A model generated the notes under the pieces. It did no database searches. It worked only from the letters and a program-made list of their open reading frames with translations, and was not told the DNA's origin. Below, one piece after another: positions 16,190 through 59,360 of a stretch of DNA of 64,000 nucleotides. The DNA lies in the IMG/VR virus record IMGVR_UViG_3300013233_000093, positions 1 through 64,000 of that record. One strand, 5' to 3'. Made by a program: the position numbers and the translations under genes. Each line of letters begins with the position of its first letter. Position 1 is the stretch's first letter.

Positions 16190-16272
16190 CTATATTACTT
16201 TAGTGATACTTAGGTAATAATACTTAGGTACGTTTGTTATAAACTATTAGATCTCTAATATGAGATCAAAGG
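16190..16272 (+). promoter_or_regulatory. Early promoter variant (TATATTAC) with two-hairpin leader
   Basis: CTATATTAC matches phiKZ early motif; leader shared with copy at 34634. Confidence 0.7.
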
Positions 16273-16281
16273 ATAAAGATT

Positions 16282-16512
16282 ATGCTTAAAATGATTTCAC
16301 TGTTTATTCACATCCTGCTTCGTTCGAGTGCACTGGTGGTTGCCAGGGCGGAAAAGAACTCTCTATGGTATCTCTACGTACCCGTCTTATGGACATTGAA
16401 TTTGTCCTGTATGCCCCTGACAGTCATGCTGTTCATGGTAGCGGATTACACATTCAAGCGCCACGGAGAAGACTTCTCCTCCTTCACAAAGGAGCATTAT
16501 CCTAACCTCTAA
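16282..16512 (+). CDS. Small hydrophobic, probably membrane, protein
   Basis: AAAGGA RBS; hydrophobic segments. Confidence 0.6.
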   Translation: MLKMISLFIHILLRSSALVVARAEKNSLWYLYVPVLWTLNLSCMPLTVMLFMVADYTFKRHGEDFSSFTKEHYPNL

Positions 16513-16519
16513 ACATATT

Positions 16520-16574
16520 CTCTATCACACAAGCATAAGCTTGTGTGATAGAGCTTACTTATTTTTTATTTTTT
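16520..16574 (+). terminator. Rho-independent terminator
   Basis: 15-bp stem CTCTATCACACAAGC/GCTTGTGTGATAGAG followed by T-tract. Confidence 0.8.
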
Positions 16575-16617
16575 ACCCAAGCTACGATTACATAGACCAA
16601 CTAACGGAAGCACGATT

Positions 16618-19110
16618 ATGATCATCGAGCGTATACAACTGAAGTACTTTGTGAAGATGACCTTAGGTGATATAACGGAACTAGACTATGCGATGGTAGA
16701 ACCACTCCAACTCATTATCGGAGCAAACGGTTGCGGCAAGACATCCTTACTGGGTGTGACAAACCCCATGCCCGGTGTGCCTGCGGATTACAGGGACGGT
16801 GGTTATAAGAAGGTATGGTTGTCACATAACGGCAATCGCTTCTATCTTGAATCCACCAAGCTTGGTAAGTCCATGAAGCATAAGTTTTGCATCTTTCCAG
16901 AAGACCATAACTTTCTGGATGACGAACCAGAAAACCTGAATCGGGGTGGTACTGTAGGTGTGCAAAAAGAGCTTGTGGAGAAGCACATCGGCTATACTCC
17001 TGAGTTGCATAAGTTACTCAGTGGCAAGTTTAGCTTTACAGGGGTCACAGCTGCCGCTAGAGAGGACATCTTTACAAAACTGTCAGGTACATCGACTACG
17101 TACGCCATCGCCCTGTACAAGAAGATCAAGGGACTGCACAGAGATTGCACTGGCGCGATCAAACATCTGGATAATAAACACGAGGAACTCATTGCTACAT
17201 TAGAAGCATCCGGTAATCCGAAAGATCTCACTGTAAGAATCAATGCAGGTAAAGAGATACTTAAAGAACTTACCCCGCTTACGCTTAATAGAGATGCCGG
17301 TGTCATGGCTAAGCGACTGGCACTTAATAACGCCATGTCCATGCTCACCGGACATATAGACTCTTGCATGAAGCGTTACAGTACGCGCATGCCCGTACAC
17401 GGTTTAACCTCTGAAAGCGATGCACAAACCAAGTTACGTACTGAACAAGATAAGCTTGCAGCCATGTTGGCGCTTATCGATAAAAACGTAACGGAGTTGG
17501 ACGGGCTGACTAAGATACAAAAACGATCGGAAGGCAGCGACGTTTCTACCGACGAGTTAAAGAAACAAATAACCAAGCTTAAGTCAGTAGCTACCACGCC
17601 TGTTACAGAAGGTGTGGATTATTCCTCAAGCGAACAAGAAGTGCTTGAAGAGTTAAACGCGGTTAAGTATACGCTGTTTCAAGAGTCCAGTGTATATGAA
17701 TCTGTAAAGGCGGGTGTGTGTACTAAGGACGAGTATGGCAGTATGAAGTCTGCGTTGGCTGTAATAGACAAAGACCTGAATCAGTGCGGCGCTAACATAT
17801 CCAGACTGGAGAACGAAATAGCCAGTGCGGAACGTGGGCTATCACAAGCGCTGGATTGCAACAAGTGTGGTAACAAGGTCACTGCAGATCCAAAGCTCAC
17901 ACAGACGTATATAGATACCTTACGTGCCACACTGGTCACACATCAAGACAAACGCACTAACATAGAAACACATCGTAAAGAACAGATGTCCAAAGGCGAG
18001 CAGATGCACTCTTATGTGGAATATTACAACCGCATACTGAAGATGCTAAAAGACGCATTTAGACTGCATCCGTTTTGGGGTTCTATTGACGGTGGTGTGC
18101 AATGGTGCGTGACGCATCCAAGTGAACTTAACGCGTTGATGACCAAAGAAGTACTGCGGTTAGAGACGCTTATTAAGACTAAAGATGCTAGTACACGTTT
18201 AAAGGACTGTGAGGACATGCTGGCGATGAGAAGTCTCGCGGTAGATGTCGATGTAGCTGGTAAAATGCGGACGCTTAGAGACGATCTGGACACTCTGTAT
18301 AAAGATCGTGATCTCACCGCTAAAAAGATCAGTACGTTAGAACATCTTATCAAAGATTACCGAAACATGGTTACTGCTATGGATGGGTTGATTGAGATGC
18401 ATGACAATGTGATTGATAAGCTTGGAGATCACAGCGAAGCTCACATTTACGAGAGCATCGGAGAGATCGTTACCAAGGAACAACATTCACTGGGCGTCCT
18501 CATGGATCAGTTACATAAACACGATATCCTTAAAGGTACAATTGCTTCTTTAAAGGCGGATCGGGAAGAGCTGGAAAAGAAACGCCGTGGCTTCGGCAAC
18601 CTTATAAAGTCATTGTCGCCTAAGACAGGCATTATTGGCGAAACCATGTCTGCGTTTGTGAACGAGTTTCTTGATAAGATGAACGACATTATCGGAGAGT
18701 TATGGGAATATGAAATGCGCATACAGCCTTGCGCTATGGAAGAAAGCGGTATGGACTACAAGTTCCCTTTACAAGTGAAAGAGGAAACCACGCCTAACTT
18801 TGCAGACGCATCTAAAGGTCAACGAGAAGTTATCGACTTTGCATTTGTGCAAGTACTGATGGCGTACAGCGGACTGGGCGAGTACCCGTTGTATCTAGAT
18901 GAGGTGGGCGGCGGCTTTGATCATGCCCATAAGAGCCGGTTTGTTTCCTTTATAAACCTGCTGATCGAATCGGGTAATTGTTCGCAGATGTTTATGGTGA
19001 ATCATTACAGTGCGGAACACGGTGGGTTAAACCACATGGAGGCAGTAGTGCTTAATACAAATAACGTATTACTGCCAGACGAATACAACAATCACGTTTC
19101 AATGAAGTAA
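16618..19110 (+). CDS. SbcC/Rad50-like SMC ATPase (phiKZ gp165-like)
   Basis: Walker A GANGCGKTS, coiled coils, Zn-hook CNKC, signature ASKGQ, Walker B LYLDE, H-loop MVNH. Confidence 0.9.
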   Translation: MIIERIQLKYFVKMTLGDITELDYAMVEPLQLIIGANGCGKTSLLGVTNPMPGVPADYRDGGYKKVWLSHNGNRFYLESTKLGKSMKHKFCIFPEDHNFLDDEPENLNRGGTVGVQKELVEKHIGYTPELHKLLSGKFSFTGVTAAAREDIFTKLSGTSTTYAIALYKKIKGLHRDCTGAIKHLDNKHEELIATLEASGNPKDLTVRINAGKEILKELTPLTLNRDAGVMAKRLALNNAMSMLTGHIDSCMKRYSTRMPVHGLTSESDAQTKLRTEQDKLAAMLALIDKNVTELDGLTKIQKRSEGSDVSTDELKKQITKLKSVATTPVTEGVDYSSSEQEVLEELNAVKYTLFQESSVYESVKAGVCTKDEYGSMKSALAVIDKDLNQCGANISRLENEIASAERGLSQALDCNKCGNKVTADPKLTQTYIDTLRATLVTHQDKRTNIETHRKEQMSKGEQMHSYVEYYNRILKMLKDAFRLHPFWGSIDGGVQWCVTHPSELNALMTKEVLRLETLIKTKDASTRLKDCEDMLAMRSLAVDVDVAGKMRTLRDDLDTLYKDRDLTAKKISTLEHLIKDYRNMVTAMDGLIEMHDNVIDKLGDHSEAHIYESIGEIVTKEQHSLGVLMDQLHKHDILKGTIASLKADREELEKKRRGFGNLIKSLSPKTGIIGETMSAFVNEFLDKMNDIIGELWEYEMRIQPCAMEESGMDYKFPLQVKEETTPNFADASKGQREVIDFAFVQVLMAYSGLGEYPLYLDEVGGGFDHAHKSRFVSFINLLIESGNCSQMFMVNHYSAEHGGLNHMEAVVLNTNNVLLPDEYNNHVSMK

Positions 19111-19123
19111 GAGGAACAGTTAG

Positions 19124-19618: not shown

Positions 19619-19633
19619 CTGTGTCCACGAGAT

Positions 19634-19675
19634 ATTCAAAACTATATCACTATTATGATAACGTACTTTGTTATC
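19634..19675 (+). promoter_or_regulatory. Early promoter + stem-loop cassette
   Basis: ATTCAAAACTATATCACTATTATG followed by GATAAC-gtacttt-GTTATC. Confidence 0.85.
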
Positions 19676-19706
19676 TAACTTTAAACCAACCAAAGAGATT
19701 ATTAAC

Positions 19707-20066
19707 ATGAGTAACGAAATCGCTAAAGCTATTGTGGATGGAATGTCAATGGCAAATGATGCAATCACGACTGGGAACGAGTTATTCTTCAGCACCACCG
19801 AGGTGACGCCTGAGATGGTTGAGAAGGTAGACAGCGCGCGTAATGATTTCATCGCGGCTGCGTACACCGCTACGGCGGAGCAGCATTCAGGCCAAGCTAC
19901 ATTTGGAGGCGAGTTTGCCCTGGGCGGTGATGTGATACTGACCGTTGACATCAACGACGTCGATAGTTTGGACGATCGTGTTGTTGGTCATGTGGAGTAT
20001 CCGATGACGGATGCGTTGACCGAAGCCCGTAAGTGGGCGCTCGATAACCTCGAGTTTGATACCTAG
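19707..20066 (+). CDS. Acidic early hypothetical protein
   Basis: Start MSNEIAK downstream of promoter cassette. Confidence 0.75.
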   Translation: MSNEIAKAIVDGMSMANDAITTGNELFFSTTEVTPEMVEKVDSARNDFIAAAYTATAEQHSGQATFGGEFALGGDVILTVDINDVDSLDDRVVGHVEYPMTDALTEARKWALDNLEFDT

Positions 20067-33879: not shown

Positions 33880-33900
33880 CTTGAATAACGATCGGTATAT

Positions 33901-33944
33901 ATTCAAAACTATATCACTATTATGATGGACAACGTGTTGTTGTC
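33901..33944 (+). promoter_or_regulatory. Early promoter + stem-loop cassette
   Basis: Consensus followed by GACAAC-gtgtt-GTTGTC. Confidence 0.85.
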
Positions 33945-33965
33945 TTTAGACTAAGGAATAGAAAT

Positions 33966-34566: not shown

Positions 34567-34620
34567 TATACTACAGTGCCATACGGCACTGTAGTATAGA
34601 CTTTCTTTATTTCTTTTTCT
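34567..34620 (+). terminator. Rho-independent terminator
   Basis: TATACTACAGTGCC-ATAC-GGCACTGTAGTATA followed by T-rich tail. Confidence 0.8.
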
Positions 34621-34633
34621 ATGCTTGCCAAAT

Positions 34634-34710
34634 ATTCAAAACTATATCACTATTATGATACTTAGGTAATAATACTTAAGTCGTTATTAGATCTCTTAGA
34701 GATCAAAGGA
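34634..34710 (+). promoter_or_regulatory. Early promoter with two-hairpin leader
   Basis: Consensus, then ACTTAGGTA-ataa-TACTTAAGT and GATCTC-tta-GAGATC. Confidence 0.85.
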
Positions 34711-34718
34711 AATTGATT

Positions 34719-38366: not shown

Positions 38367-38383
38367 TACTGTTCTCCAGGTTT

Positions 38384-38420
38384 ATTCAAAACTATATCAC
38401 TATTATGCACAATATTGATG
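38384..38420 (+). promoter_or_regulatory. Early promoter
   Basis: ATTCAAAACTATATCACTATTATG. Confidence 0.8.
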
Positions 38421-38443
38421 CTACTAATTTAGGAGTTTTAACC

Positions 38444-43641: not shown

Positions 43642-43711
43642 TGTAATTTCCTTTGCTTAGGTACATGATTCTAACCAGTGCAAAATTACAGGAATGGAGA
43701 AGTAAACAAGC

Positions 43712-43745
43712 CTATATCACTATTATGATAACGTACTTTGTTATC
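43712..43745 (+). promoter_or_regulatory. Early promoter + stem-loop cassette
   Basis: CTATATCACTATTATGATAACGTACTTTGTTATC, identical to the 19634 copy from the core onward. Confidence 0.8.
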
Positions 43746-43766
43746 TAACTTTAACTATGAGGAACC

Positions 43767-48632: not shown

Positions 48633-48888
48633 TGACGGTGACGTCCTAGTGGAAGAACTAGACGTGAGGTTTCGCATCGGCCGATTACAGGATGTTGAGT
48701 ATACGCATATGTCCGTAACGTACATAGGCACCGAGGGCGCCGTGCACATGTCGCACTCTAACGCCACATCCAGACTGGGTGCATTTTCAGTGAAGGAAGG
48801 CGAGTACGCCGCTGCATATGCTTCAATTCCGCAACAGGGCGAGTTTGCGGATGTATGTCTAATTACATCGAACGTTAAGCCATATTAA
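48595..48888 (+). CDS. Hypothetical protein
   Basis: ORF ends just before promoter cassette; start may be 48610. Confidence 0.55.
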   Translation: MRITKMSLSLIYSDGDVLVEELDVRFRIGRLQDVEYTHMSVTYIGTEGAVHMSHSNATSRLGAFSVKEGEYAAAYASIPQQGEFADVCLITSNVKPY

Positions 48889-48900
48889 CGATCGTTAGAT

Positions 48901-48944
48901 ATTCAAAACTATATCACTATTATGATGGACAACGTGTTGTTGTC
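48901..48944 (+). promoter_or_regulatory. Early promoter + stem-loop cassette
   Basis: Consensus followed by GACAAC/GTTGTC hairpin. Confidence 0.85.
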
Positions 48945-48969
48945 TTTTAACTGATTAGGGAATAGAACC

Positions 48970-49266
48970 TTGCGCACTATGCTAGAAGATGTAACCGTAA
49001 CCGTTGAATTTCGGGAGCTGTTTAGTCGCGGCAATGTAAATTTCAGACCACCGGAGCAGCTATTTGATCCTGCATACGTTTCATCTTTGCTGTACGCCAG
49101 TCATAAGGTTTATGTACGTGCCCGCCTCACCATGGGAGATTGTTACATAACCACGGCGACGGCGAGCAACGATTATGGACTGCCGCAGGTTATCGATGTC
49201 GATGCGTACGGTGTTCCGTGCGACGCATCTAACGCCGCGTGGGCGGTTTACGCAGCACCCGAGTAA
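48970..49266 (+). CDS. Hypothetical early protein
   Basis: AGGGA RBS after promoter. Confidence 0.6.
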   Translation: MRTMLEDVTVTVEFRELFSRGNVNFRPPEQLFDPAYVSSLLYASHKVYVRARLTMGDCYITTATASNDYGLPQVIDVDAYGVPCDASNAAWAVYAAPE

Positions 49267-49322
49267 CCCTAACAAGCCGCTTGGTTTCTCAAGCGGCCTC
49301 TATGCAGTAATAAGGAAGAAAT

Positions 49323-50390
49323 ATGAATAAGTTAGACACCACAAGTTTCGCATTAACCGTATTGGATCACGGATACAATTTGTTTCCTGCTTCTATGGAA
49401 GGCGGTTACCGGCCGTTCGGCGCAATGTTTAACCCAGCTCTTCTGCCCACCGAGAAATTAGTGGACGGCGGTGTAATCTTTGTGCCGGATAAAAACTGGT
49501 ACATTGCTAAAGCAGGTACAGATCTTAGCGCGCTGCAAAATGAAAATACCTCGCTTTACCCAATAAACAGCGACGGGATGGTTGACTTTGACTCACAATT
49601 CCCACATACGGTGTTATGGCAGATTGTGGTTGTTCGTCCGCCACAGACCATGTCGCCTATATCTACATTGCGTAAAGCCATGGACGATTGGTCAGTCAGT
49701 AAAGATATCCCGCACGGGACTGCTTCTCGTGAGACAGAGACTCATTTTGCCACAGGCACACCGGCGCGTAACATCTCTTCAAGCCTCGTTGATGCATTAA
49801 AAGCATTGATTAATGATTACGGTACGTTCGGTGTTGAACAATCGTGCATTGTGTATCGCATGACCACTGCACCTGTTTACAACATGACCGAAGCAAGCAT
49901 TGCGTTTGGCTGGGATCACCGTGGTAAGGTTACCTTCAAAACGGCGGACATGCTCGTCGTAGTCCACATTGACGTGCCGACCATGCCGCGTACGCGATGC
50001 GGCAGGGCATCGATGTTAATTGACGGCAACCCGGTTATCTTCGGCACATCAACGATAGATTGCGAACGACAGATATCCAGGATTGCAGAGTTACACAACG
50101 AGGGTAGATCTTATTACGATCTGGCCGAAAAACCAGGAGCGTACATTTCACACCTCACCGATATGGGTAAAACGTTCTCGTTGTTTGTGTATACAGACAC
50201 GGGTATTACTGTACTTTACTCTCCAGGCGATGAAACCTATAACGGTAGTGGTGTTGACAGATGCATCGATAGGTCTGGTTATTCAGCCAACGTTCGAGAT
50301 GTTAAACAAGAATACGTGCTGGCGCGGGTTCGTAAATTGCCGTATGACATAAGTCCGGACATCAGGCGTGCTAGTCGCTGGCACGCATAA
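49323..50390 (+). CDS. Hypothetical protein
   Basis: AAGGA RBS, 355 aa. Confidence 0.75.
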   Translation: MNKLDTTSFALTVLDHGYNLFPASMEGGYRPFGAMFNPALLPTEKLVDGGVIFVPDKNWYIAKAGTDLSALQNENTSLYPINSDGMVDFDSQFPHTVLWQIVVVRPPQTMSPISTLRKAMDDWSVSKDIPHGTASRETETHFATGTPARNISSSLVDALKALINDYGTFGVEQSCIVYRMTTAPVYNMTEASIAFGWDHRGKVTFKTADMLVVVHIDVPTMPRTRCGRASMLIDGNPVIFGTSTIDCERQISRIAELHNEGRSYYDLAEKPGAYISHLTDMGKTFSLFVYTDTGITVLYSPGDETYNGSGVDRCIDRSGYSANVRDVKQEYVLARVRKLPYDISPDIRRASRWHA

Positions 50391-50425
50391 TCCATTAACC
50401 ACTTTAATACTTCTGAGGATTGGAA

Positions 50426-50821
50426 ATGAATGGTGATGACTATCAAGCACATGCCAGCAAGGTTAAGAAGGATGGCAATTTGCTTAAAGAAGTACCACAC
50501 ACGTTGATAGACTACAAAATGTGTATCGATGCAGTGACAAACTTCGAGTATGCGATTAAGCATGTTCCAGACGAGATCGCTGACCATGCTCTCTGCGAAA
50601 TCGCCGTTAGGAAAAGTGGCAACGTTTTTATGCACACGCCCATGCGATTTAGATCGCCTGATATGTGTAAAATAGCAGTAAGCGATTTTGGCTTTATGCT
50701 GTCGGAAGTACCTGTGATACATCGTACGCCAGAGCTGTGTGCAATCGCGGTAGCTGGAAACCCTAGAGCGCGGGAATTCTTTCCGTGTAACTTAACAGAA
50801 GAGGAAAGTTGTAATGACTAA
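50426..50821 (+). CDS. DUF4116-like helical repeat protein
   Basis: LKEVP...MCIDAV, IKHVP...LCEIAV, LSEVP...TPELCAIAV repeats. Confidence 0.75.
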   Translation: MNGDDYQAHASKVKKDGNLLKEVPHTLIDYKMCIDAVTNFEYAIKHVPDEIADHALCEIAVRKSGNVFMHTPMRFRSPDMCKIAVSDFGFMLSEVPVIHRTPELCAIAVAGNPRAREFFPCNLTEEESCND

Positions 50822-51221
50822 ACTAACTGAGAATAACATCCGTGTGATCGTGGATAAGTCTAACGGTATTATTTCCACAAGTAAAACCGATGAAGGTTTG
50901 GCTGGATGGGAGTTCGTCGTTAACGAAAAAGAGTTTGCCGCGTTAGACCCTGGCAATTACATAATCATCTCTTCGTGCATGACGGTTGTATTGGTAACAG
51001 AGACTGCGTTAGATCTATTCATGGAGCTGAAGTTTTTCGATACGACAGCGCTATACGCCGTACCGCAGCTCCACCAGATAGCCGCCCGCGTGCCTAACGT
51101 AGATGCATACCGCTCGCTATGTGAGGCAATGGATGTCGCAGTAGAAGAAGATTATTGCGCGTACTGTGAAAAGTTTAACGATCGTGAGACCGGAGACATT
51201 ATCTTAAAGGTAATGACCTAA
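50814..51221 (+). CDS. Hypothetical protein
   Basis: GAGGA RBS; overlaps upstream stop. Confidence 0.7.
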   Translation: MTKLTENNIRVIVDKSNGIISTSKTDEGLAGWEFVVNEKEFAALDPGNYIIISSCMTVVLVTETALDLFMELKFFDTTALYAVPQLHQIAARVPNVDAYRSLCEAMDVAVEEDYCAYCEKFNDRETGDIILKVMT

Positions 51222-51227
51222 CTTAAC

Positions 51228-51275
51228 TATATCACCCACGCTTAAGCGTGGGTGATATAACCATTTTTTATTTTT
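51228..51275 (+). terminator. Terminator (perfect 32-bp palindrome)
   Basis: TATATCACCCACGCTTAAGCGTGGGTGATATA with T-tract. Confidence 0.8.
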
Positions 51276-51283
51276 CACCGTTT

Positions 51284-51324
51284 ATTCAAAACTATATCAC
51301 TATTATGATAACGATCGTGTTATC
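51284..51324 (+). promoter_or_regulatory. Early promoter + stem-loop cassette
   Basis: Consensus followed by GATAAC-gatcgt-GTTATC. Confidence 0.85.
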
Positions 51325-51357
51325 TAACCTTTAAACTAACCAAAGAGTGATTGAATT

Positions 51358-52131
51358 ATGTGCATGATTGATTTCGTAGAAACACGCTTCTTTGACACCA
51401 TCGATGCTCGTCGCGCGCAATGTGATGGGTACGCAGTACGCCGCAAGGTAGATATCGATGTAGATAAAGATGGTCGGGTACGCAATGAATGGTCTGAGCT
51501 GGTAGGCAGTTACATTAACAACCCGGATGCGATAACTGCTAAATGTTATTATATTCCGAAGGGTTTGAACCGTATGGACAGTGACGGCGCGGTGCGCCGC
51601 GTGGCGTGTATCGACCATAACGGCGCTTTGAGTGTACTTTCAGAAGTCGTAATTCACGCTCCGGTACACCGTACAGTGCACGCAGGGTTACCAAAACACT
51701 TGGCGGATTTCTCCACGACAGAATCAAACGGTTTTCGCACTGTCACCCTGCCCTCGTCACCCTCACTGACGGCGAAAGACGTGGCGTTCATGACCGATTT
51801 GTTCCAGGCAGATTACGTAGTATCACGCTTTAAGTGTTACACCGTATACGTGACCCTGTCGTCAAAAGTGACTGGTGTCGTAGGTCATATTGAAGACGAC
51901 GCTCATGGTACAGTTTATGTATGGGATAAGTACATGAACGAAGAACCCTGTACAGAAGAGGTCTCTGAATTAGCAGGTTACGCAACACCAGACAAACCCG
52001 CCGAATACGAGACTGTGTTTCAAGATGTATTCGAGGCATTATTTAATAAAGGTAAAATTAATGCCAGAGGCAAGGTTAAGGCGATTGCGCTTAAAGCCAT
52101 TGACGACATCTTCGACGCACTGGAAAAGTAA
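51358..52131 (+). CDS. Hypothetical early protein
   Basis: 257-aa ORF after promoter. Confidence 0.7.
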   Translation: MCMIDFVETRFFDTIDARRAQCDGYAVRRKVDIDVDKDGRVRNEWSELVGSYINNPDAITAKCYYIPKGLNRMDSDGAVRRVACIDHNGALSVLSEVVIHAPVHRTVHAGLPKHLADFSTTESNGFRTVTLPSSPSLTAKDVAFMTDLFQADYVVSRFKCYTVYVTLSSKVTGVVGHIEDDAHGTVYVWDKYMNEEPCTEEVSELAGYATPDKPAEYETVFQDVFEALFNKGKINARGKVKAIALKAIDDIFDALEK

Positions 52132-52139
52132 GTACTATG

Positions 52140-52184
52140 CCACACCAGGCCGTGAAGCCTGGTGTGGTGCACTTTCTTTTTTTC
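52140..52184 (+). terminator. Rho-independent terminator
   Basis: CCACACCAGGC/GCCTGGTGTGG with T-tract. Confidence 0.8.
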
Positions 52185-52233
52185 TAAAAGGCGCGGTATT
52201 AACTGTATCCAGAATAAATAATCGAGAATTATT

Positions 52234-52686
52234 ATGCTTAATGAAACGAAACCAGTAACAACCGTAATTGATGAAGACGCGGGAAGTGCGTTAATGCAGT
52301 TTCCAGGACAGGCACCTAACTTTATCTTTTCGTGCGATGCCACTGCAGGGTTTTTATCCCTAGCCACGGACGAACCTATTTTGTTATACGTCACTGCACG
52401 AGACAATCTAAACGTAACGAAGAAAATTCGTTTCGACATAAACGAGACAGAGGAGCCTGGGTATTTTCTAAAGTACACACCGCCACTGCCTTACGTTGCA
52501 GTGCACCAGATAAACGGTAGTCTTTTAGTGACATGCTTAGACGGGACAGGAATTCACTTAGTGCCGAAATTGTCGTTACGTGAATCTGGCGGATACGTGT
52601 TGCGTGTAAGGGAAGAAGCGGTGTCCGAACGACTGTGCTCATTATTTGTAGCTAACGCTACGCTACAGGCATTACGGAACTTATAA
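52234..52686 (+). CDS. Hypothetical protein
   Basis: 150-aa ORF in co-oriented run. Confidence 0.65.
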   Translation: MLNETKPVTTVIDEDAGSALMQFPGQAPNFIFSCDATAGFLSLATDEPILLYVTARDNLNVTKKIRFDINETEEPGYFLKYTPPLPYVAVHQINGSLLVTCLDGTGIHLVPKLSLRESGGYVLRVREEAVSERLCSLFVANATLQALRNL

Positions 52687-52697
52687 CGGAGATTATT

Positions 52698-53036
52698 ATG
52701 GCAGTCTTGGTAAAGTCACCGGTCCCTGTAGAGGCAGAGGCTAATGTAATCGACGGGATTGTAGAGGAACACGACGAAGCAATTGCGCGTCTACGTGCAG
52801 TGTTTAAAGTGGAACCGTATAAGCTATTAACAATAGCTAAACTGTACGCACTGGTGGATAAACTGGACGGGCTTCCGTCCAACGATCCGTTGATACTGGA
52901 TGTGTTTGGGGAACCTAAGGTCGGATACGATCTTGTAATCCTTATTAACAGGCGTGGTAAAAAGCAGTACCTCACCGCGCAGCTACTGTCACAAACACCA
53001 CCACCGACATTTGTACAAAGGATGTTTGGACAATGA
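52698..53036 (+). CDS. Hypothetical protein
   Basis: GGAG RBS. Confidence 0.65.
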   Translation: MAVLVKSPVPVEAEANVIDGIVEEHDEAIARLRAVFKVEPYKLLTIAKLYALVDKLDGLPSNDPLILDVFGEPKVGYDLVILINRRGKKQYLTAQLLSQTPPPTFVQRMFGQ

Positions 53037-53566
53037 TAAACGATACAGATAGTTATACGGATGCAGAATTGACCGCCCGGGTATCAGACGATACACTTTT
53101 CAGGGTAATCCATCAATGGACGGAGTCCGGTGACCCCGACAATACAAGCATTGGATTAAGCCTTGTGTCCATACGTCCGATTGTGGACGCTCCTAGGATT
53201 ACAATTGAATTAGAGTATGATTGGGATTCCACTGATTGGGTGGTTGCATGGCTCACAGGTAAACATTTCGACGACAAACGTCTTGTGATGACGGACGACG
53301 GCAGGGTGCGTGATACGTTTCACATGACAGTCCCAAGCATGGGATATGTGAGAATGGTGCATAATTTCGATGAACCATATGCCCTAATGAGTATGCAAGA
53401 TGATAGTGGTGTGGAGGTGGGCATTACATCTAAAATGTCATCAGACCGTATGTGCATGACTATAAAGCTAAACGTAGAGCGATATGACGGTGATTCATTT
53501 CGCACGCGGTTGTTGCAAGAGCAACTACGTGAAACCAGCAAAATAAAAACCCTTTTAACCAAGTAA
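53033..53566 (+). CDS. Hypothetical protein
   Basis: ATGA overlap with upstream gene. Confidence 0.65.
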   Translation: MINDTDSYTDAELTARVSDDTLFRVIHQWTESGDPDNTSIGLSLVSIRPIVDAPRITIELEYDWDSTDWVVAWLTGKHFDDKRLVMTDDGRVRDTFHMTVPSMGYVRMVHNFDEPYALMSMQDDSGVEVGITSKMSSDRMCMTIKLNVERYDGDSFRTRLLQEQLRETSKIKTLLTK

Positions 53567-53584
53567 CCCAATTAAGGATATATC

Positions 53585-53944
53585 GTGGACATAAAAACAT
53601 TAGAAACTCCGATCCCACAGGGAGATTATTTAACCCTGTACGCGGACGACTTATGGTTGCTGTCGGTGCCAAATAAGGTACTTACTTGCTATGAACTGGC
53701 CAGGTCTGATTTTAAGTTAGTGGTTTCCACCAACGACGTCGACCGCGTAACGGTTTACACCGACACCGCGACAGTCCATTGCGTGAATCGTAATCAACCA
53801 TCTCAAACGCATTACATCAATCGCCACATACCAAGCGATGTCAGCAAACCAGTGCATATAAGCATGTCTGATATACGAGATAACACCTGCACTCGATTTA
53901 CAAGCCGTAAGGTTTGCGGTTACACACTACTAGGACCATTGTAA
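53585..53944 (+). CDS. Hypothetical protein
   Basis: AAGGA RBS; TAATG coupling to thyA. Confidence 0.6.
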
Positions 53945-54738
53945 TGAAAGCGTATTTAGATCTGTTAGGGGACGTGCTGTTAACCGGACAGTCACGCGAC
54001 GACCGTACAAGCACAGGTACCATTTCTGTATTTGGCAGACAGGCGCGGTATAACCTAGAAAATGAATTCCCGTTGGTGACCACGAAGAAGGTCAACCTGC
54101 ACGCCATCATTCACGAGCTATTGTGGTTCTTGAAAGGTGACACCAATGTCAAATACCTGCAGGATAACAATGTCCGGATTTGGAATGAATGGGCAGCTGA
54201 AAATGGCGATCTAGGTCCCGTGTATGGAAAGCAGTGGCGATCGTGGACAGATAGCGAAGGCTGGAGTGTCGATCAGATCGGGGAAGTCATCGAATCCATT
54301 AAAACAAATCCTTTGTCCCGCAGGCATATTGTAACTGCCTGGAACCCGTCTGACCTAAATGACATGGCCTTGCCGCCATGTCATTTACTGTTTCAGTTTT
54401 ATGTCCGTGGGGACTATCTTGATTGCCAACTCTATCAGAGATCCGCTGACATGTTCTTAGGTGTACCGTTTAACATCGCGTCGTATGCGTTGTTAACTAT
54501 GATGATTGCACAAGTCACGGGGTTAAAGGCAGGTGAGTTTGTTCATACCTTGGGCGATGCACACATTTACACCAACCATACGGCACAGGTAAATACACAG
54601 CTACGTAGGTTGCCATGCAAGCCACCCCGCATGTTGTTAAATCCTTCTGTTACTAACATTGACGACTTTACATACGACGACTTTAAACTGACCGGTTATG
54701 AACCGTTCCCAGCATTGCGCGGAAAGGTAGCTGTGTGA
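53944..54738 (+). CDS. thyA: Thymidylate synthase
   Basis: [55 protein letters not shown]. Confidence 0.97.
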
Positions 54739-55232
54739 CCATAATACATGCGATAGTGGCGTTGGATTTAAACGACGTCATAGGAGATACCAGAACCAAC
54801 GATCTGCCCTGGCGTTCGCCGGGAGACCTTAAGAACTTCAAGCGCATAACGGACGGTGAGGTCATCGTCATGGGCAGGCGGACATTCGAGTCTTTGCCTA
54901 ACGGACCACTGCCAAATAGGCGTAACGTTGTAGTCTCTCGAACAATGACGAATATCCCAGGAGTAACGGTTATTCCTTCGATGAAAGGCTTTGGTAAACG
55001 GAGTGAACATAAACGCATCTTCATCATAGGAGGTGCAGGACTTTTTGCCGCAGCGTGGCATCGGATAGACTATCTGCACATGACCAGAATAGGCTTTCAT
55101 TCTCCAGGCGATTTGAGGTTTCCTATAACTAACCCTGAAAGTTATTTTACCAAAATAACAGAAGATGTTAATCTGGAACCTTACGGACACGTACCGGCGA
55201 TCTATTCGGTTTTCGAAAGGCGTGATCGTTAG
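54735..55232 (+). CDS. folA: Dihydrofolate reductase
   Basis: LPW...[37 protein letters not shown]; GTGA overlap with thyA. Confidence 0.93.
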
Positions 55233-55235
55233 ATT

Positions 55236-55278
55236 TTCAAAACTATATCACTATTATGATGGACAACGTGTTGTTGTC
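55236..55278 (+). promoter_or_regulatory. Early promoter + stem-loop cassette
   Basis: Consensus; 55227-55287 identical to 58489-58549. Confidence 0.85.
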
Positions 55279-55300
55279 TTTTAACTAGAGAGATTTTATT

Positions 55301-56152
55301 ATGGAACCGACACTAGAAGAACTTAAAGACATTCTCGTCACGATGTGCGAGGGACGCGGCACCCGATTAACTATCGTCCACGATCATCTGACGAAATGCA
55401 ACCGTTATCATAAAACGCGGTTTTGTAACGTCGGAAATGACCGCATGTTCGTAACGATCACTGCATCAGACGTACGCGTTGGCAAGCATGAACTGTGCAC
55501 ACTCGCCACCGTGCACGTGTATTTTGTAAACGAAAACGCCCGTGTTAATCCAAACTGGGATAAGGTGCGTGAATACGAACTGGTTCTCACCGAGCCATAC
55601 ATCGTCCCGTTGGACGCGCAGCTGGTGCTAGACTGGCCAGTCGTCACACATACTAACGGCGCTCTGACGTATAAGATAAACCCTTCAACATACCTCGCAG
55701 TTGAAGACACTACCTGGTTAAAGCACGGTCGTTGGAATGGCGGTCATGTTGAGGTAACTGATACGTCAACTGAACCGCACAAGATGGCTGTAGATGTGGC
55801 TGCCTTATTAAAGACTTATAGTGCGCCAGAAGGTAACTTCGATGACTATGTCACCGGCGTTTCAAAACTGGCGTTTAACAATAAGATTACTGCCATATGT
55901 ACCCCACAGATTACCTTTATACGCGAATCGACATCGGAGACATTTCACGATTATGACGTCTACGCAGTCATTGCCTCCGACGAATACATCGTAATACCGG
56001 TAATTTCTCCATGCCCTAAGTTAGATACCCCACCGGTTATAGTGGATAACGGCACTAGAATCATGTTTGGAGATGGTAGTTTTTGGTCGTTAGCCACATT
56101 CTTATTGGCAATGACTATCGAACCCGTAAATAAGGCACTGCCTGACGATTAG
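55301..56152 (+). CDS. Hypothetical early protein
   Basis: 283-aa ORF after promoter. Confidence 0.7.
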   Translation: MEPTLEELKDILVTMCEGRGTRLTIVHDHLTKCNRYHKTRFCNVGNDRMFVTITASDVRVGKHELCTLATVHVYFVNENARVNPNWDKVREYELVLTEPYIVPLDAQLVLDWPVVTHTNGALTYKINPSTYLAVEDTTWLKHGRWNGGHVEVTDTSTEPHKMAVDVAALLKTYSAPEGNFDDYVTGVSKLAFNNKITAICTPQITFIRESTSETFHDYDVYAVIASDEYIVIPVISPCPKLDTPPVIVDNGTRIMFGDGSFWSLATFLLAMTIEPVNKALPDD

Positions 56153-56214
56153 AAATACAAGAAGCAAAAAACCAATAACGGGAATTAGCCCGTTATAAAC
56201 AGGAGAAGATTAAA

Positions 56215-56346
56215 ATGCAATACATTAATTGGTTATTGATGGTAATCCCGGCACTACTGACTCCACTGGCTGCTATAGCTGGTGTATGGATCGCGGTGGT
56301 TTGTCCAATCAGAGTGAGTAAAGATTGCCTACGTAAGGAGGGTTAA
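56215..56346 (+). CDS. 43-aa single-TM peptide
   Basis: AGGAG RBS; MQYINWLLMVIPALLTPLAAIAGVWIAVVCPIRVSKDCLRKEG. Confidence 0.55.
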   Translation: MQYINWLLMVIPALLTPLAAIAGVWIAVVCPIRVSKDCLRKEG

Positions 56347-56348
56347 TT

Positions 56349-56540
56349 GTGATATTTTATCACTACGCAAGTGAGCAGTATCCAGAGTTATTATCCAAGC
56401 AGGCACAGGGCGGCCCGACGAACGCAGATTTAAAAGAGTAAATTCGAATGTCTGTGTTTAGAGGTTATCCCGCATCGTATGAGAAACACATATCCCTGTT
56501 TATAGAACCACCTCCCTTTAAAGAGTTACCGAGTATATAA
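56349..56540 (+). pseudogene. Probable pseudogene with in-frame TAA
   Basis: AAGGAGG RBS; MIFYHYASEQYPELLSKQAQG...LKE*IRMSVFRGYPASYEKHISLFIEPPP...; stop at 56439. Confidence 0.55.
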
Positions 56541-56620
56541 TGACTTACCCTAAAAACGGTAAGATCAAAGTAAGTAAAACAAGACGCATTGTCTTATAAC
56601 CCAAAAGAAGGATTAGAATT

Positions 56621-57136
56621 ATGACAGCCATAATCGCGTCGTACAAAGATGGTTATTACCATCTCACAGCCGACACTTGTGTTTCCATGACCGGGTATGT
56701 TAGTACTTGGACAAAGGTATTTAGTACGCAGTACGCCGCAGTAGCGATCTCTGGTAGTGCAGGGATTTGCACACGCGTTGCAACGCGCGCACTGGCCGCG
56801 CACGACGGTTCTGATATCGAGGCACTGCTTGCGGACTTACAGAAACGCGCCGGTATATACCATGACAGCAAAACGGAGGTTTACCTCACAGTCATCCACG
56901 CTACCGGGATTTACGCAATAAGTACGTCAGATACCCGCGCTTACGGCGACATAACGTTCACCGCCGGAAGCGGTGCGGATGCAGTTCTTGTAGCGTTAAC
57001 CGCAGCTAGTCGTCTTGGCAAGTTCAAAACGGAATTAGAGCGCCACGCGTTTGCAATGAAGCAGGCTGCACGCTGGGAACCCAGCGTTAATGCTAAAGTA
57101 GATCAGGTATCCATCAAAGCAGGAGACGCAGTATGA
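56621..57136 (+). CDS. Proteasome-beta/HslV-like Ntn hydrolase (N-terminal Thr)
   Basis: M-T start, LTADT, TKVF, AISGSAG, AGSGA: canonical Thr1/Asp17/Lys33/GSG pattern. Confidence 0.75.
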   Translation: MTAIIASYKDGYYHLTADTCVSMTGYVSTWTKVFSTQYAAVAISGSAGICTRVATRALAAHDGSDIEALLADLQKRAGIYHDSKTEVYLTVIHATGIYAISTSDTRAYGDITFTAGSGADAVLVALTAASRLGKFKTELERHAFAMKQAARWEPSVNAKVDQVSIKAGDAV

Positions 57137-57651
57137 TTTTCACTCACAACGACGGCAAATCTTTGTTGGTCTACGCGAATGAATATAATTCCGTGGAGCT
57201 TATTGAGCCAGATGACTACTCGATCCACGAGGCAGATAATGCGTCGATTACGTCGGGCTACACTAACTCATTTACGGCGTTGGTAAAACGTCATATGACG
57301 GATAAATACGCCAGCCAGCCATGCGCATACACAGCAGCCATGGTGTTCAAAGATGAGTTAATTGCAATAGCCAAGCACTATGAATTAGACATTACCAAGA
57401 TGTCACACTTCGTAGTTAGATTGGGTAATGAGATGGTGCAGATTGCAGACACCGACATTTACATTGACGACTCAGAAGTCAGCACGTTGAACTGTTCAAC
57501 TGCATTGGTGTATCTTACATCGATCAAAGATCTTATCCCTGGTATAACAAAGGCACGTACGCGTAAGCTTATGCTGGAGCATCTTGAAAACGATCTCCCG
57601 CAGACAAACCCGCCGTTCATAAAGGTGTTTAAGTTTAAGAAAGGCAGGTAA
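57133..57651 (+). CDS. Hypothetical protein, probable inactive Ntn-fold paralog
   Basis: ATGA overlap; same length and collinear similarity to upstream gene; lacks Thr1. Confidence 0.55.
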   Translation: MIFTHNDGKSLLVYANEYNSVELIEPDDYSIHEADNASITSGYTNSFTALVKRHMTDKYASQPCAYTAAMVFKDELIAIAKHYELDITKMSHFVVRLGNEMVQIADTDIYIDDSEVSTLNCSTALVYLTSIKDLIPGITKARTRKLMLEHLENDLPQTNPPFIKVFKFKKGR

Positions 57652-57655
57652 GCGC

Positions 57656-57704
57656 ATATCACCTAGGCCATACGGCCTAGGTGATATATGTGGTCTTTTC
57701 TTTT
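57656..57704. terminator. Terminator between convergent genes
   Basis: ATATCACCTAGGCC-ATAC-GGCCTAGGTGATAT with T-rich tail. Confidence 0.8.
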
Positions 57705-58447
57705 TATCTGGAAATCCGTAATCCGGTTAGAGCGTAATGCTGATCTTTATTAGCCATGATGGTGATCTTTCTCCATCGTTTTAAATGAGTCGTCCGTAGC
57801 AACTCAAAGGAGTCTGAGTAAGAATCTATAATCTCCCGCTTTTTGCCAGAACTCGCCCCGCCGTTCATGTACATGTACGTACTGTTTAGACTGAGTTCTT
57901 TATGAATAAACCCTTTCTCCGCTAACACGGCCATATCACCATAAAGTAACTTAGTGGAGTTTGCCATATTACGCATCTCGGCGTCATTCTCCATGCGACA
58001 TCTTAACCCGATGTGGATATAAGGTATACGCTTTGGACTGGCAATGGTGTTCGGTACCGGCATATACACTGCAGTAGAGCCTTGGTAGTTAGGACTGCCG
58101 CTGACCATACCACCTGTGTTTCCACCGTACTCAGAGGAGTAACCATACTCCAGTGTAAAGACTTCGGTAATGTCTCTGCCCTGTCTAATACGAGGTGGTA
58201 TGAAGATAGCAGTCCCCGTTTGAAACTCTCGTCTAGGTAGTCCTGTAATGTCCAGCGTTTCCACATCGCCAGAAGCGATGTTTAAATCCGGTGTAAGGAT
58301 GCCGTTAATCGTATCTCGGATAATACGACTTTCCAGACTGCTGTAGTCAAACCCTGTGCCTTCAGATGCAGTATGTGCATCCGCTAACAGTTCCTTTGGT
58401 ATCTCTTGATAAATTCGATTAAGTGCATAGTCAATATGAGTGCCCAT
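57704..58447 (-). CDS. Conserved phiKZ-family protein usually found near phuZ
   Basis: IDYALNRIYQEIPKELL...SLESRI...DLNIASG, LRCRMEND, REIIDSYSD. Confidence 0.65.
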   Translation of the reverse strand: MGTHIDYALNRIYQEIPKELLADAHTASEGTGFDYSSLESRIIRDTINGILTPDLNIASGDVETLDITGLPRREFQTGTAIFIPPRIRQGRDITEVFTLEYGYSSEYGGNTGGMVSGSPNYQGSTAVYMPVPNTIASPKRIPYIHIGLRCRMENDAEMRNMANSTKLLYGDMAVLAEKGFIHKELSLNSTYMYMNGGASSGKKREIIDSYSDSFELLRTTHLKRWRKITIMANKDQHYALTGLRISR

Positions 58448-58497
58448 AATACATACCCCATTGTAAATTCATATGATCGTCCTGTGTCCGTTAGATT

Positions 58498-58540
58498 TTC
58501 AAAACTATATCACTATTATGATGGACAACGTGTTGTTGTC
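58498..58540 (+). promoter_or_regulatory. Early promoter + stem-loop cassette
   Basis: Consensus followed by GACAAC/GTTGTC hairpin. Confidence 0.85.
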
Positions 58541-58563
58541 TTTTAACTATAGGTTTATGTGAT

Positions 58564-59250
58564 ATGAACGAAGTTAGTAGTGTAGCAGAAGCTTTGGTAT
58601 TAATAAGGATGGATGAATGTAAGTTAAGTTCGATCCCTGTAGATTATCGTACACACACCGTCTGTCTCGCCGCGGTTACGAAAGATGCGTCTTGCCTCGC
58701 CAGCGTCCCAGAAGAGGTCATGTGCAAGTCCATTATAATGGCAAGTGGTGCGTGGACGCGTGCCGTAAACGGCACAACGGAGCTTATTTTAACAGTAAGC
58801 AGCGATGACATATCCAGGAATGTCTTACAGGCAATGTGTGAAGTTATGGAAGCGGTCGTTATTTTAAGCCAATGCGCACCCGGCGACCCAGCTGCGCCGG
58901 GACCACGCACCGTATTTCCACTAGAAAATAAACCATTAGATGATTTGTTGAACGCAGCAGATAATGATTTTCTAGACGATACGCAGGCAGGCAGTGAACT
59001 GGATGAATTGTTTGACTGCAGCGGTGACACCACCGCAATGTTATTTCCAAAGCTCACACCGTCCAAGATCCGCTGCATGAGTTTCTATGGTGACATAAAC
59101 AAGCCGTCAAACACAGCATTGCCCGTCAACGCAGATGCAAGCCGTGCGGTAAATGCAATACTTGATTCGGTTAGTACGATAAAGCATATCAGTGACACCG
59201 TGCGACTTAGCGATGCAACGCTGGATCGTATATCCAAGATGCTTAAGTAG
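58564..59250 (+). CDS. Protein with N-terminal DUF4116-like repeats
   Basis: LSSIPVDYRTHTVCLAAV...LASVPEE. Confidence 0.65.
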   Translation: MNEVSSVAEALVLIRMDECKLSSIPVDYRTHTVCLAAVTKDASCLASVPEEVMCKSIIMASGAWTRAVNGTTELILTVSSDDISRNVLQAMCEVMEAVVILSQCAPGDPAAPGPRTVFPLENKPLDDLLNAADNDFLDDTQAGSELDELFDCSGDTTAMLFPKLTPSKIRCMSFYGDINKPSNTALPVNADASRAVNAILDSVSTIKHISDTVRLSDATLDRISKMLK

Positions 59251-59266
59251 TCATAACTAATATAGC

Positions 59267-59306
59267 GTGTAGTGACGTCAGTCACTGCATGTTATTTTTT
59301 ATTTTT
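59267..59306 (+). terminator. Rho-independent terminator
   Basis: GTGTAGTGAC-GTCA-GTCACTGCAT with T-tract. Confidence 0.7.
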
Positions 59307-59314
59307 CACCGTTT

Positions 59315-59360
59315 ATTCAAAACTATATCACTATTATGATGGACAACGTGTTGTCATCAT
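59315..59360 (+). promoter_or_regulatory. Early promoter + stem-loop upstream of phuZ
   Basis: Consensus followed by ATGATGGACAAC-gt-GTTGTCATCAT. Confidence 0.85.

What the first reader, a model, noticed from the sequence alone, without database searches (positions are those of the whole stretch)
16190..59360. Family of promoter-stem-loop cassettes heading the accessory blocks (PeSL-like shuffling units)
Seen: ten + strand copies of CTATATCACTATTATG (19634, 33901, 34634, 38384, 43712, 48901, 51284, 55236, 58498, 59315; nine with upstream TTCAAAA) plus a TATATTAC variant at 16190. Identity extends well beyond a promoter: 61 bp identical at 55227/58489 and about 45 bp at 51263/59294. Many follow a terminator and precede an RBS. 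Known: phiKZ early promoters contain TATATTAC; T4-type phages use promoter-early-stem-loop cassettes for modular gene shuffling. Inference: vRNAP promoters that also serve as recombination anchors for accessory gene gain and loss.
Basis: partly seen in the sequence, partly recalled or inferred. Interest (0 to 1): 0.7.

Follow-up and report, generated by a model that had tools for sequence, protein, structure and literature searches.

The report
Early-promoter cassettes of a jumbo phage
The repeats are almost certainly this uncultivated phiKZ-like giant phage's own early promoters, each joined to a short 5' RNA hairpin and ribosome site. This is a known kind of element in an unusually modular form, and its proposed role as a gene-shuffling anchor is only circumstantially supported.

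Summary
The 16-mer occurs 10 times exactly in the window, always on the + strand, with 0 expected by chance. The window is bases 1-64000 of a 222,906-bp phiKZ-like (chimallivirus-type) jumbo phage record. That record holds 25 copies of this class (A) plus 6 of a TATATTAC class (B). All are on the + strand, all but one (116285) intergenic by my crude ORF calls, and 22-178 nt (mostly 40-77) upstream of a + strand ORF.

The motif has the layout of published phiKZ-family early (virion RNA polymerase) promoters: TTYAAA, 2 nt, a TATAYYAC octamer, 6 nt, then an invariant G. Three relatives carry their own forward-only versions at syntenic positions. Cassettes head PhuZ, the chimallin/non-virion RNAP pair, a DNA polymerase and many ORFans, and none sits directly upstream of a recognised structural gene.

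The full unit is: optional terminator, a promoter of about 27 bp, an RNA hairpin starting at +1 to +4, Shine-Dalgarno, start codon. This resembles T4 PeSLs in architecture but lacks their sigma-70 promoter, so it is not a PeSL.

The recombination-anchor idea is only partly supported. In favour are mosaic cassettes, two indels of cassette-gene-cassette versus a single cassette, and variable syntenic slots enriched for cassettes. Against it, in a closer trio of relatives most "breakpoints" are fast-diverging orthologues, and cassette number is unchanged. No RNA data exist.

The parts
16131..16160 (+). Terminator-like hairpin ending the upstream unit, followed by the CTGTGTT upstream element
   Evidence: Read from the sequence and folded
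16181..16281 (+). Class-B cassette. Promoter core CTATATTACTTTAGTG at 16190-16205, putative +1 G at 16205, leader hairpin 16207-16230 (SL3 type, with G-U pairs), second hairpin GATCTC..GAGATC, SD AAAGGA. Heads the ORF 16282-16512.
19633..19706 (+). Class-A cassette. Promoter 19633-19657, leader hairpin 19657-19675 (SL1, GAUAAC..GUUAUC), SD. Heads the ORF 19707-20066.
33900..33965 (+). Class-A cassette. Promoter 33900-33924, hairpin 33927-33945 (SL2). Heads the ORF 33966-34562.
34567..34598 (+). Intrinsic-terminator-like hairpin with a T-rich tail upstream of cassette 34642
34633..34712 (+). Class-A promoter joined to the SL3 leader otherwise typical of class B (a mosaic). Heads the ORF 34713-35081.
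38383..38443 (+). Class-A cassette with a weak unique leader. It lies in a divergent intergenic region next to the - strand gene 36765-38366. Heads the ORF 38444-38863.
43703..43766 (+). Class-A core without TTCAAAA, with an SL1 leader at 43727-43745. Heads the 14-kb ORFan block 43767-57651.
48900..48969 (+). Class-A cassette with an SL2 leader at 48927-48945. Heads the ORF starting at 48970 or 48979.
51228..51259 (+). Terminator: a 14-bp stem followed by a T run
51283..51357 (+). Class-A cassette with an SL1 leader at 51307-51324. Heads the ORF 51358-52131.
55234..55300 (+). Class-A cassette with an SL2 leader at 55261-55279. It is 61 bp identical to the 58505 copy. Heads the ORF 55301-56152.
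58496..58563 (+). Class-A cassette with an SL2 leader at 58523-58541. Heads the single gene 58564-59250. This cassette-plus-gene unit is absent from the same slot in G001.
59262..59295 (+). Terminator: a 15-bp stem followed by a T run
59314..59444 (+). Class-A cassette with a leader hairpin at 59338-59358 and a 107-nt UTR. Heads the PhuZ tubulin gene 59445-60494. G001 and G002 also have a cassette at this position.
7049..12974 (+). Two split multisubunit RNA polymerase beta/beta'-like genes (7049-8689 and 8634-12974). These are context that identifies the phage type and the likely reader of the promoters.
   Evidence: relatives

Best explanation
The repeats are the early promoters of an uncultivated phiKZ-like (chimallivirus-type) jumbo phage. 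They are read by the phage's own virion-packaged multisubunit RNA polymerase. Each promoter sits in a composite regulatory cassette of about 70-130 bp with this order: (1) often the intrinsic terminator of the preceding unit; (2) a promoter of about 27 bp, TATTCAAAA plus CTATATCACTATTATG in class A or a TATATTAC..AGTG version in class B; (3) transcription probably starting at the last G; (4) an RNA hairpin beginning at +1 to +4; (5) a Shine-Dalgarno site and the start codon. Thirty-one such cassettes, all on one strand, switch on the early transcription units. These are mostly small ORFans, plus PhuZ, the nuclear-shell protein with a non-virion RNAP subunit, and the DNA polymerase. The 5'-terminal hairpin most likely stabilises or marks these mRNAs; that step is inferred. 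Shown here: the sequence family, its strand and position bias, its match to published consensus sequences, the lineage-specific versions in relatives, and hairpins of different sequence at the same place. Inferred: which polymerase reads it, the exact start site, the timing, and the hairpin's function. Because the cassettes are direct repeats with 25-60 bp of perfect identity, they will also act as substrates for homologous recombination. I regard that as a real but secondary consequence, not their selected function.
For: The family is real: 10 of 10 window copies and 31 of 31 genome copies lie on the + strand, all but one (116285, inside the 3' end of gene 115105-116334) are intergenic by my crude ORF calls, and they sit 22-178 nt (mostly 40-77) upstream of a + ORF with an SD. 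The genome encodes split RNAP beta/beta' genes, tail sheath, terminase and PhuZ, with only phiKZ-like relatives at about 25% identity. The published predicted early promoters of N1M2, OBP, 201phi2-1, EL and phiKZ share the TTYAAA-N2-TAYATYAY layout (PMC7058600). The review PMC7598289 states that every RNAP-encoding jumbo phage has such a motif centred near -10 upstream of early operons, confirmed wherever transcripts were mapped. The G lies exactly 7 nt after the octamer in 7 of 7 phiKZ copies and in G000, G001 and G002. The relatives have forward-only lineage versions: G001 24-25 copies with TATATAAC, G002 about 23 with CCATATTACC, G004 13, and G006-G008 10 each. Cassettes head the chimallin homologue plus the PHIKZ055 homologue, PhuZ and the DNA polymerase homologue. 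None sits directly upstream of the sheath, terminase or virion genes. Leader hairpins start at +1 to +4 in most copies. At least 10 unrelated stem sequences occur across three phages, with G-U pairs, and they fold more stably than random genomic windows (MWU p=4e-9 for G000, 0.002 for G001).
Against: No transcript 5' ends could be examined. No listed RNA run holds the sequence, and the one DNA run is fragmentary. The assignment to the virion RNAP rather than the non-virion RNAP rests on homology of the motif alone. Class A ends in TATG, which is also the phiKZ late (nvRNAP) initiator. The hairpins are modest (-5 to -8 kcal/mol), a few cassettes lack one (125500, 214129), and phiKZ itself shows no consistent 5' hairpin.
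Confidence: 0.78

Rival explanations
1. The cassettes are selected as recombination anchors (PeSL-like shuffling units). Homologous exchange in the identical promoter core excises or integrates cassette-gene circles and drives gain and loss of early genes.
For: All copies are direct repeats, with perfect identity up to 61 bp. Modules are mosaic: three leader types combine with several upstream modules, and 98454 (class B) and 198928 (class A) share terminator and leader but differ in the promoter. The slot 124683-125606 holds cassette-gene-cassette in G000 but a single cassette (114 and 151 bp) in G001 and G002. The PhuZ slot behaves similarly: 1469 bp in G000, 146 bp in G001, 783 bp in G002. 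Sixteen of 17 cassette-bearing syntenic slots vary by at least 500 bp, against 12 of 51 without cassettes (p=3e-7). One of only three out-of-order anchors is a cassette-headed gene. In G001 even the terminator stem is the same in about 18 copies, which function alone does not require.
Against: In the G006/G007/G008 trio (about 80% nt identity) all 10 cassettes are retained in order. Six to seven of the 10 first genes are still homologous at 33-72% aa identity, so the 'breakpoints' are mostly rapid divergence. Flank similarity shows no decay with distance. No junction or circle reads were seen in the one region laid (54000-59900), but coverage was too low to count as evidence. Early genes turn over fast in all phages whatever lies beside them.
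Confidence: 0.3
2. The identity beyond the promoter reflects binding sites. The three leader families (SL1, SL2, SL3) would be operators or RNA targets of phage regulators that define co-regulated sets of early genes. SL3, for example, is two copies of a near-palindromic 10-mer.
For: A few leader types are reused at scattered loci (12, 8 and 4 copies). The SL2 loop is invariant in G000. Stems are conserved while loops vary in G001 and G002. The GATAAC and GATACTTAGG leader starts are shared between G000 and G002 despite about 50% aa divergence.
Against: No regulator has been identified. Many unrelated stems sit at the same position, which suggests that structure rather than a specific site is what matters. 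No Rfam family matches.
Confidence: 0.25
3. They are promoters of the non-virion RNAP (middle or late), or dual promoters, because class A ends in TATG, the phiKZ late initiator.
For: TATG at the putative start in G000 class A and in G001. The late consensus T-3 A T G+1 is given in PMC7598289.
Against: The conserved octamer plus TTYAAA is the experimentally verified early signature in phiKZ. Late promoters show no upstream conservation. No cassette sits directly upstream of a recognised structural gene. Class B and G002 lack TATG but keep the G.
Confidence: 0.1
4. They are host sigma-70 promoters as in true T4 PeSLs, or promoters for a T7-like single-subunit RNAP, or a MITE-like mobile element.
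For: TATTAT resembles a -10 box, and the 27-bp conservation is reminiscent of T7-class promoters.
Against: There is no -35 box at 16-18 nt spacing. Sigma-70-like sites are depleted in the region (21 found against 33.6 expected) and coincide only weakly (9 of 12) with two cassettes, 48909 and 55243. No PF00940 match was found in the genome, though the control was uninformative. There are no inverted ends or target duplications, and orientation is strictly gene-linked.
Confidence: 0.03

Closest known systems
Early (virion-RNAP) promoters of phiKZ-like jumbo phages: phiKZ TATATTAC, and the predicted consensus sequences of 201phi2-1, OBP, N1M2 and EL
   Same: Same layout: TTYAAA, 2 nt, TAYATYAY octamer, 6 nt, G. 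Tens of copies per genome, one strand, upstream of early operons, in a phage with split multisubunit RNAPs.
   Different: The octamer here is TATATCAC in the main class. The conserved block is exact over about 25 nt in 22 copies. Two discrete promoter classes coexist. The promoter is fused to a small set of reusable 5' hairpin leaders, and often to a terminator. The first 50 kb of phiKZ shows no consistent 5' hairpin.
PeSL / PmSL cassettes of T4-like phages (Arbiol 2010; Comeau 2014, PMC4122927)
   Same: A composite intergenic unit of terminator stem-loop, early promoter, SD and ATG. Many near-identical direct copies, concentrated among variable ORFan genes. Some indels are bounded by two copies.
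   Different: The promoter is not sigma-70 type. The phage family and the polymerase differ. An additional transcribed 5' hairpin is the best-conserved structure. Terminators are present in under half of the G000 copies. There is no evidence for circles. A closer trio of relatives shows no gain or loss of cassettes.
5'-terminal stabiliser stem-loops of bacterial and phage mRNAs (ompA-type; from my own knowledge, not tested here)
   Same: A hairpin within the first few nucleotides of the transcript, with varied sequence and conserved position.
   Different: The 5' end is inferred, not mapped. The effect on decay is untested.

Membership tests
phiKZ-like (chimallivirus) early / vRNAP promoters | The host phage encodes split multisubunit RNAP beta/beta' genes, in virion and non-virion sets | tested here: met
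   RNAP beta-like genes at 7049-8689 and 8634-12974. A homologue of the nvRNAP subunit PHIKZ055 at 73462-74913. PhuZ and a chimallin homologue are present.
phiKZ-like (chimallivirus) early / vRNAP promoters | A conserved AT-rich motif of about 10 nt of TATATTAC type, with an upstream T/A-rich element | tested here: met
   The TTCAAAA-C-TATATCAC and TATATTAC classes match the published consensus sequences. The G lies at the same 7-nt spacing as in phiKZ.
phiKZ-like (chimallivirus) early / vRNAP promoters | Many copies on one strand, upstream of early operons and not of structural genes | tested here: met
   31 of 31 copies are on the + strand and 30 of 31 are intergenic by crude ORF calls. They head PhuZ, chimallin/nvRNAP, DNA polymerase and ORFans. 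Expression timing itself was not measured.
phiKZ-like (chimallivirus) early / vRNAP promoters | Primary transcript 5' ends about 7 nt downstream of the motif early in infection; initiation by virion RNAP | not testable with these tools
   No listed RNA run holds the phage.
T4-type PeSL | A sigma-70-like early promoter (-35, N17, -10) | tested here: not met
   No -35 box at the proper spacing. Consensus sites are depleted and coincide only weakly (9 of 12) with two cassettes.
T4-type PeSL | A terminator stem-loop immediately upstream of the promoter | tested here: inconclusive
   Present in about 13 of 31 copies in G000, 20 of 25 in G001 and 14 of 23 in G002.
T4-type PeSL | SD and start codon at the 3' end of the element | tested here: met
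T4-type PeSL | Indels or replacements between close relatives bounded by the elements | tested here: inconclusive
   Supported at long range. In the closer trio it is mostly fast-diverging orthologues, with no cassette gain or loss.
T4-type PeSL | Excised mini-circles detectable | not testable with these tools
   Only fragmentary contigs of one DNA run were available.

The most novel reading that the evidence does not exclude
In this clade of uncultivated nucleus-forming jumbo phages, early genes may be organised as portable expression cassettes: terminator, vRNAP promoter, 5' hairpin, SD. The invariant promoter core would double as the crossover site for gaining, losing and re-heading early genes. 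The conserved 5'-terminal hairpin would be a dedicated mark of virion-RNAP transcripts, serving for example to protect them from host 5'-end-dependent decay or to handle or export them from the early infection compartment.
Probability: 0.2. Interest if true: 0.7.

Novelty: new variant of a known kind. Interest (0 to 1): 0.42.

Why it matters
It gives a ready-made map of the early transcription units of an uncultivated nucleus-forming jumbo phage, with 31 predicted starts. It shows how the early-promoter sequence drifts from lineage to lineage (TATATTAC, TATATCAC, TATATAAC, CATATTAC) while its geometry stays fixed. That variation is useful for working out how the sigma-less virion RNAP reads promoters. 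The reusable 5' hairpin leaders and the mosaic cassettes are a testable lead on early-mRNA handling and on how ORFan early genes turn over. As a phenomenon, however, it extends known biology rather than overturning it.

Tried and rejected
- **Close relatives by motif.** The exact 16-mer in IMG/VR gave 18 single, unrelated chance hits, none with the TTCAAAA flank. The 23-mer in metagenome contigs gave none.
- **Close relatives by gene.** Megablast of 12 kb against phage genomes found no match. A PhuZ-based locus search found nothing. The nearest relative anywhere has 54% aa identity in an RNAP subunit, so a phi1/RB49-style comparison of the window's own phage is impossible.
- **RNA evidence.** Two run searches and one read-laying found only a low-coverage DNA run from a microbial mat, and no listed RNA run holds the phage. 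A loose end at 59296 is merely a contig from the 125.4-kb cassette crossing into the repeat.
- **Other promoter or element types.** Rfam gave no family in the window. The sigma-70 reading was rejected. No T7-like RNAP was found, although the control was silent.
- **Local gene conversion.** Cassette-flank similarity does not correlate with genomic distance in G000, G001 or G002.
- **Paralogy of cassette-headed genes.** This is rare. The exception is three small class-B-headed proteins at about 25% identity, whose cassettes are 91-93% identical.
- **Function of headed genes.** PHROG and Pfam searches of cassette-headed genes were almost all empty.
- **Papers.** Two papers, one on phiKZ transcription (PMC4178840) and one on the OBP genome (PMC3264338), are not held.
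Full report
**Observation.** The 16-mer CTATATCACTATTATG is present 10 times exactly in the window, always on the + strand. Shuffles give 0.00 exact matches, and there are no extra copies at up to 3 mismatches.
- Nine copies carry that extension; 43712 does not.
- The 61-bp identity between 55227 and 58489 is exact.
- The identity at 51263/59294 is about 47 bp.
- The TATATTAC variant at 16190 is real.

**What the genome is.** The window is bases 1-64000 of a 222,906-bp IMG/VR virus record.
- It encodes split multisubunit RNAP beta/beta' genes (7049-8689 and 8634-12974), a tail sheath, a terminase, ribonucleotide reductase and an SbcC-like protein.
- It also encodes PhuZ tubulin at 59445-60494.
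- Outside the window it encodes a weak homologue of the phage nuclear-shell protein, and homologues of the phiKZ nvRNAP subunit gp55 and the DNA polymerase gp50.
- Database phages match only at about 25% protein identity, and all are phiKZ-like jumbo phages.
- It is therefore an uncultivated phage of the nucleus-forming (chimallivirus) type.

**The whole family.** The genome holds 31 copies in two classes.
- Class A comprises 22 exact copies, 2 near copies (116285 and 168839) and one degenerate copy at about 153373.
- Class B has the core CTATATTACTTTAGTG, with 6 copies.
- All 31 lie on the + strand. All but one (116285, which overlaps the 3' end of gene 115105-116334) are intergenic by my crude ORF calls, although only about 11% of the genome is uncovered by called ORFs.
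- They sit 22-178 nt (mostly 40-77) upstream of a + strand ORF that has a Shine-Dalgarno site.
- Of 259 self-BLAST repeat pairs in the genome, 213 are cassette-to-cassette.

**Anatomy.** The class-A consensus is conserved from about -24 to +3 relative to the last G.
- Upstream, about 13 of 31 copies have a terminator-like hairpin with a T tail, and many have a CTGTGTT element.
- Downstream, most copies have a hairpin starting at +1 to +4.
- The hairpins fall into a few families: SL1 (GAUAAC..GUUAUC, 4-5 copies), SL2 (GGACAAC-GUGUU-GUUGUC, 12 copies), SL3 (two copies of a near-palindromic 10-mer pairing through G-U, 8 copies), and several unique ones.
- These leaders fold more stably than random genomic windows (Mann-Whitney p=4e-9). 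G-U pairs point to the RNA level.
- No Rfam family matches.

**Comparison with what is known.**
- A published table of predicted early promoters (PMC7058600) gives consensus sequences for N1M2, OBP, 201phi2-1, EL and phiKZ. These share the layout TTYAAA, 2 nt, TAYATYAY, and in some phages ..GTG.
- Class B fits the 201phi2-1 consensus position for position. Class A fits the EL spacing.
- The review PMC7598289 states that every RNAP-encoding jumbo phage has such a motif centred near -10 upstream of early operons, and that it proved to be the early promoter wherever transcripts were mapped. Late promoters, it says, show only T-3 A T G+1.
- In the first 50 kb of phiKZ, 7 of 7 TATATTAC sites have a G exactly 7 nt after the octamer. 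G000, G001 and G002 have the same spacing.
- The start site at that G is therefore a reasoned inference, not a measurement.
- Sigma-70-type sites are depleted (21 found against 33.6 expected) and coincide only weakly (9 of 12) with two cassettes, 48909 and 55243. No T7-like RNAP was detected.

**Relatives.** The nearest genome, G001, has 54% aa identity in the RNAP subunit.
- G001 carries 24-25 forward-only copies of CTATATAACT(TG/AC)TATG. They sit in an almost invariant cassette of about 125 bp: the same terminator, the promoter, an AAGAGA..TCTCTT hairpin at +2, SD and ATG.
- G002 (50% identity) carries about 23 forward-only copies of CCA(T/C)ATTACCTTAnTG, followed by a GAUAACAC-N4-GUGUUAU hairpin.
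- G004 and the G006-G008 group have TATATTAC versions.
- The three genomes G000, G001 and G002 are collinear over 77 triple best-hit anchors, of which only 3 are out of order.
- Cassettes sit at syntenic places: before PhuZ, after the SbcC-like gene, and after several other anchors.
- The promoter therefore tracks the lineage, as expected for a polymerase-specific signal. The 5' hairpin is a clade feature that phiKZ does not show.

**Test of the shuffling idea: evidence in favour.**
- Cassettes are mosaic.
- Cassette-headed + strand runs are poor in genes shared with G001: 28 of 108 against 65 of 124 elsewhere (p=5e-5).
- Sixteen of 17 cassette-bearing syntenic slots vary by at least 500 bp among the three genomes, against 12 of 51 slots without cassettes (p=3e-7).
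- The slot between genes 122500-124683 and 125606-127003 is cassette-gene-cassette (923 bp) in G000 but a single cassette (114 and 151 bp) in G001 and G002. The outer terminator and the inner leader are recognisably orthologous. This is what integration of a circle at the promoter core would leave behind.
- The PhuZ slot is similar: cassette 58505 plus gene 58564-59250 is extra in G000 relative to G001.

**Test of the shuffling idea: evidence against or neutral.**
- In G006, G007 and G008 (about 80% nt identity) each genome keeps the same 10 cassettes in order.
- There, unalignable segments do start at cassettes more often than at random + gene starts: 3-6 of 10 against about 1.1 expected (p from below 0.001 to 0.07, in six non-independent comparisons).
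- However, 6-7 of the 10 first genes are still homologous at 33-72% aa identity. Most of these 'breakpoints' are therefore fast-diverging early genes, or allele swaps, which I cannot tell apart.
- Flank similarity does not fall with distance.
- The other variable slots are mostly explained by an eight-member paralogous gene family without cassettes.
- No read-level junctions could be assessed.

**Verdict.** The element is a family of early-promoter cassettes. As promoters they are a known kind. The variant features are the exactness of the core, two coexisting promoter classes, reusable 5' hairpin leaders and frequent fusion to terminators. They work like PeSLs in layout but are not PeSLs. Their role in gene turnover is plausible and partly supported but unproven, and it is probably a side-effect of being long direct repeats next to fast-evolving genes.

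Noticed in passing
window 1-281 and record end 222665-222906; ORF window 3-7040 (-): A 129-bp tandem repeat (2.2 copies, 98% identity) lies at both record ends, inside a giant - strand ORF that runs across the ends. The G001 homologue is 3373 aa. The 239-bp 'direct terminal repeat' of the record is therefore probably an assembly overlap within a coding repeat, not true genome termini.
   Followed up: partly
window 36765-38366 (-); G000 66926-68527, 68622-70121, 91497-93053, 199554-201002 (-), 201043-202251 (-), 206281-207654 (-), 208793-210022 (-): An eight-member paralogous family of 400-530-aa proteins with a shared N-terminal region of about 135 aa (up to 80% aa identity, 85-92% nt) and divergent remainders. 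There is no Pfam or PHROG hit. They account for about a third (roughly 4 of 12) of the cassette-free variable slots relative to G001 and G002. They are possibly tail fibres or receptor-binding proteins.
   Followed up: partly
window 39093-40991 (-): The ribonucleotide reductase small subunit is 632 aa, with its Pfam domain split into two stretches (about 41-118 and 409-591). The G001 orthologue is 359 aa. That implies an insertion of about 290 aa, possibly an intein or homing-endonuclease-like element. This gene is also the only core anchor out of order in both G001 and G002.
   Followed up: no
G000 64319-64576, 98543-98782, 121538-121807 (outside the window; class-B cassettes): Three small proteins starting MKL(V/I)KEF, headed by class-B cassettes, are only about 25% identical to each other. 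Their cassettes, by contrast, are 91-93% identical over about 125 bp. The regulatory DNA is far better conserved than the genes it drives.
   Followed up: partly
G000 98379-98537 vs 198853-199010: These two cassettes share the same terminator and the same SL3 leader, but the roughly 35-bp promoter between them is class B in one and class A in the other. This is a clean internal swap.
   Followed up: yes
L115 (phiKZ) 2665 and 4516: Two phiKZ early promoters share an identical leader of about 35 nt downstream of TATATTAC. Leader re-use therefore also occurs in phiKZ, but without a stable hairpin.
   Followed up: no
G001 (L062-L072), about 18 of its 25 cassettes: In the nearest relative nearly the whole intergenic unit, from just after the stop codon through an identical GC-rich terminator stem to the ATG, is repeated at about 70-88% mean pairwise identity over roughly 70 of its ~125 bp (-35 to +35). 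This is much more uniform than in the window's phage.
   Followed up: partly
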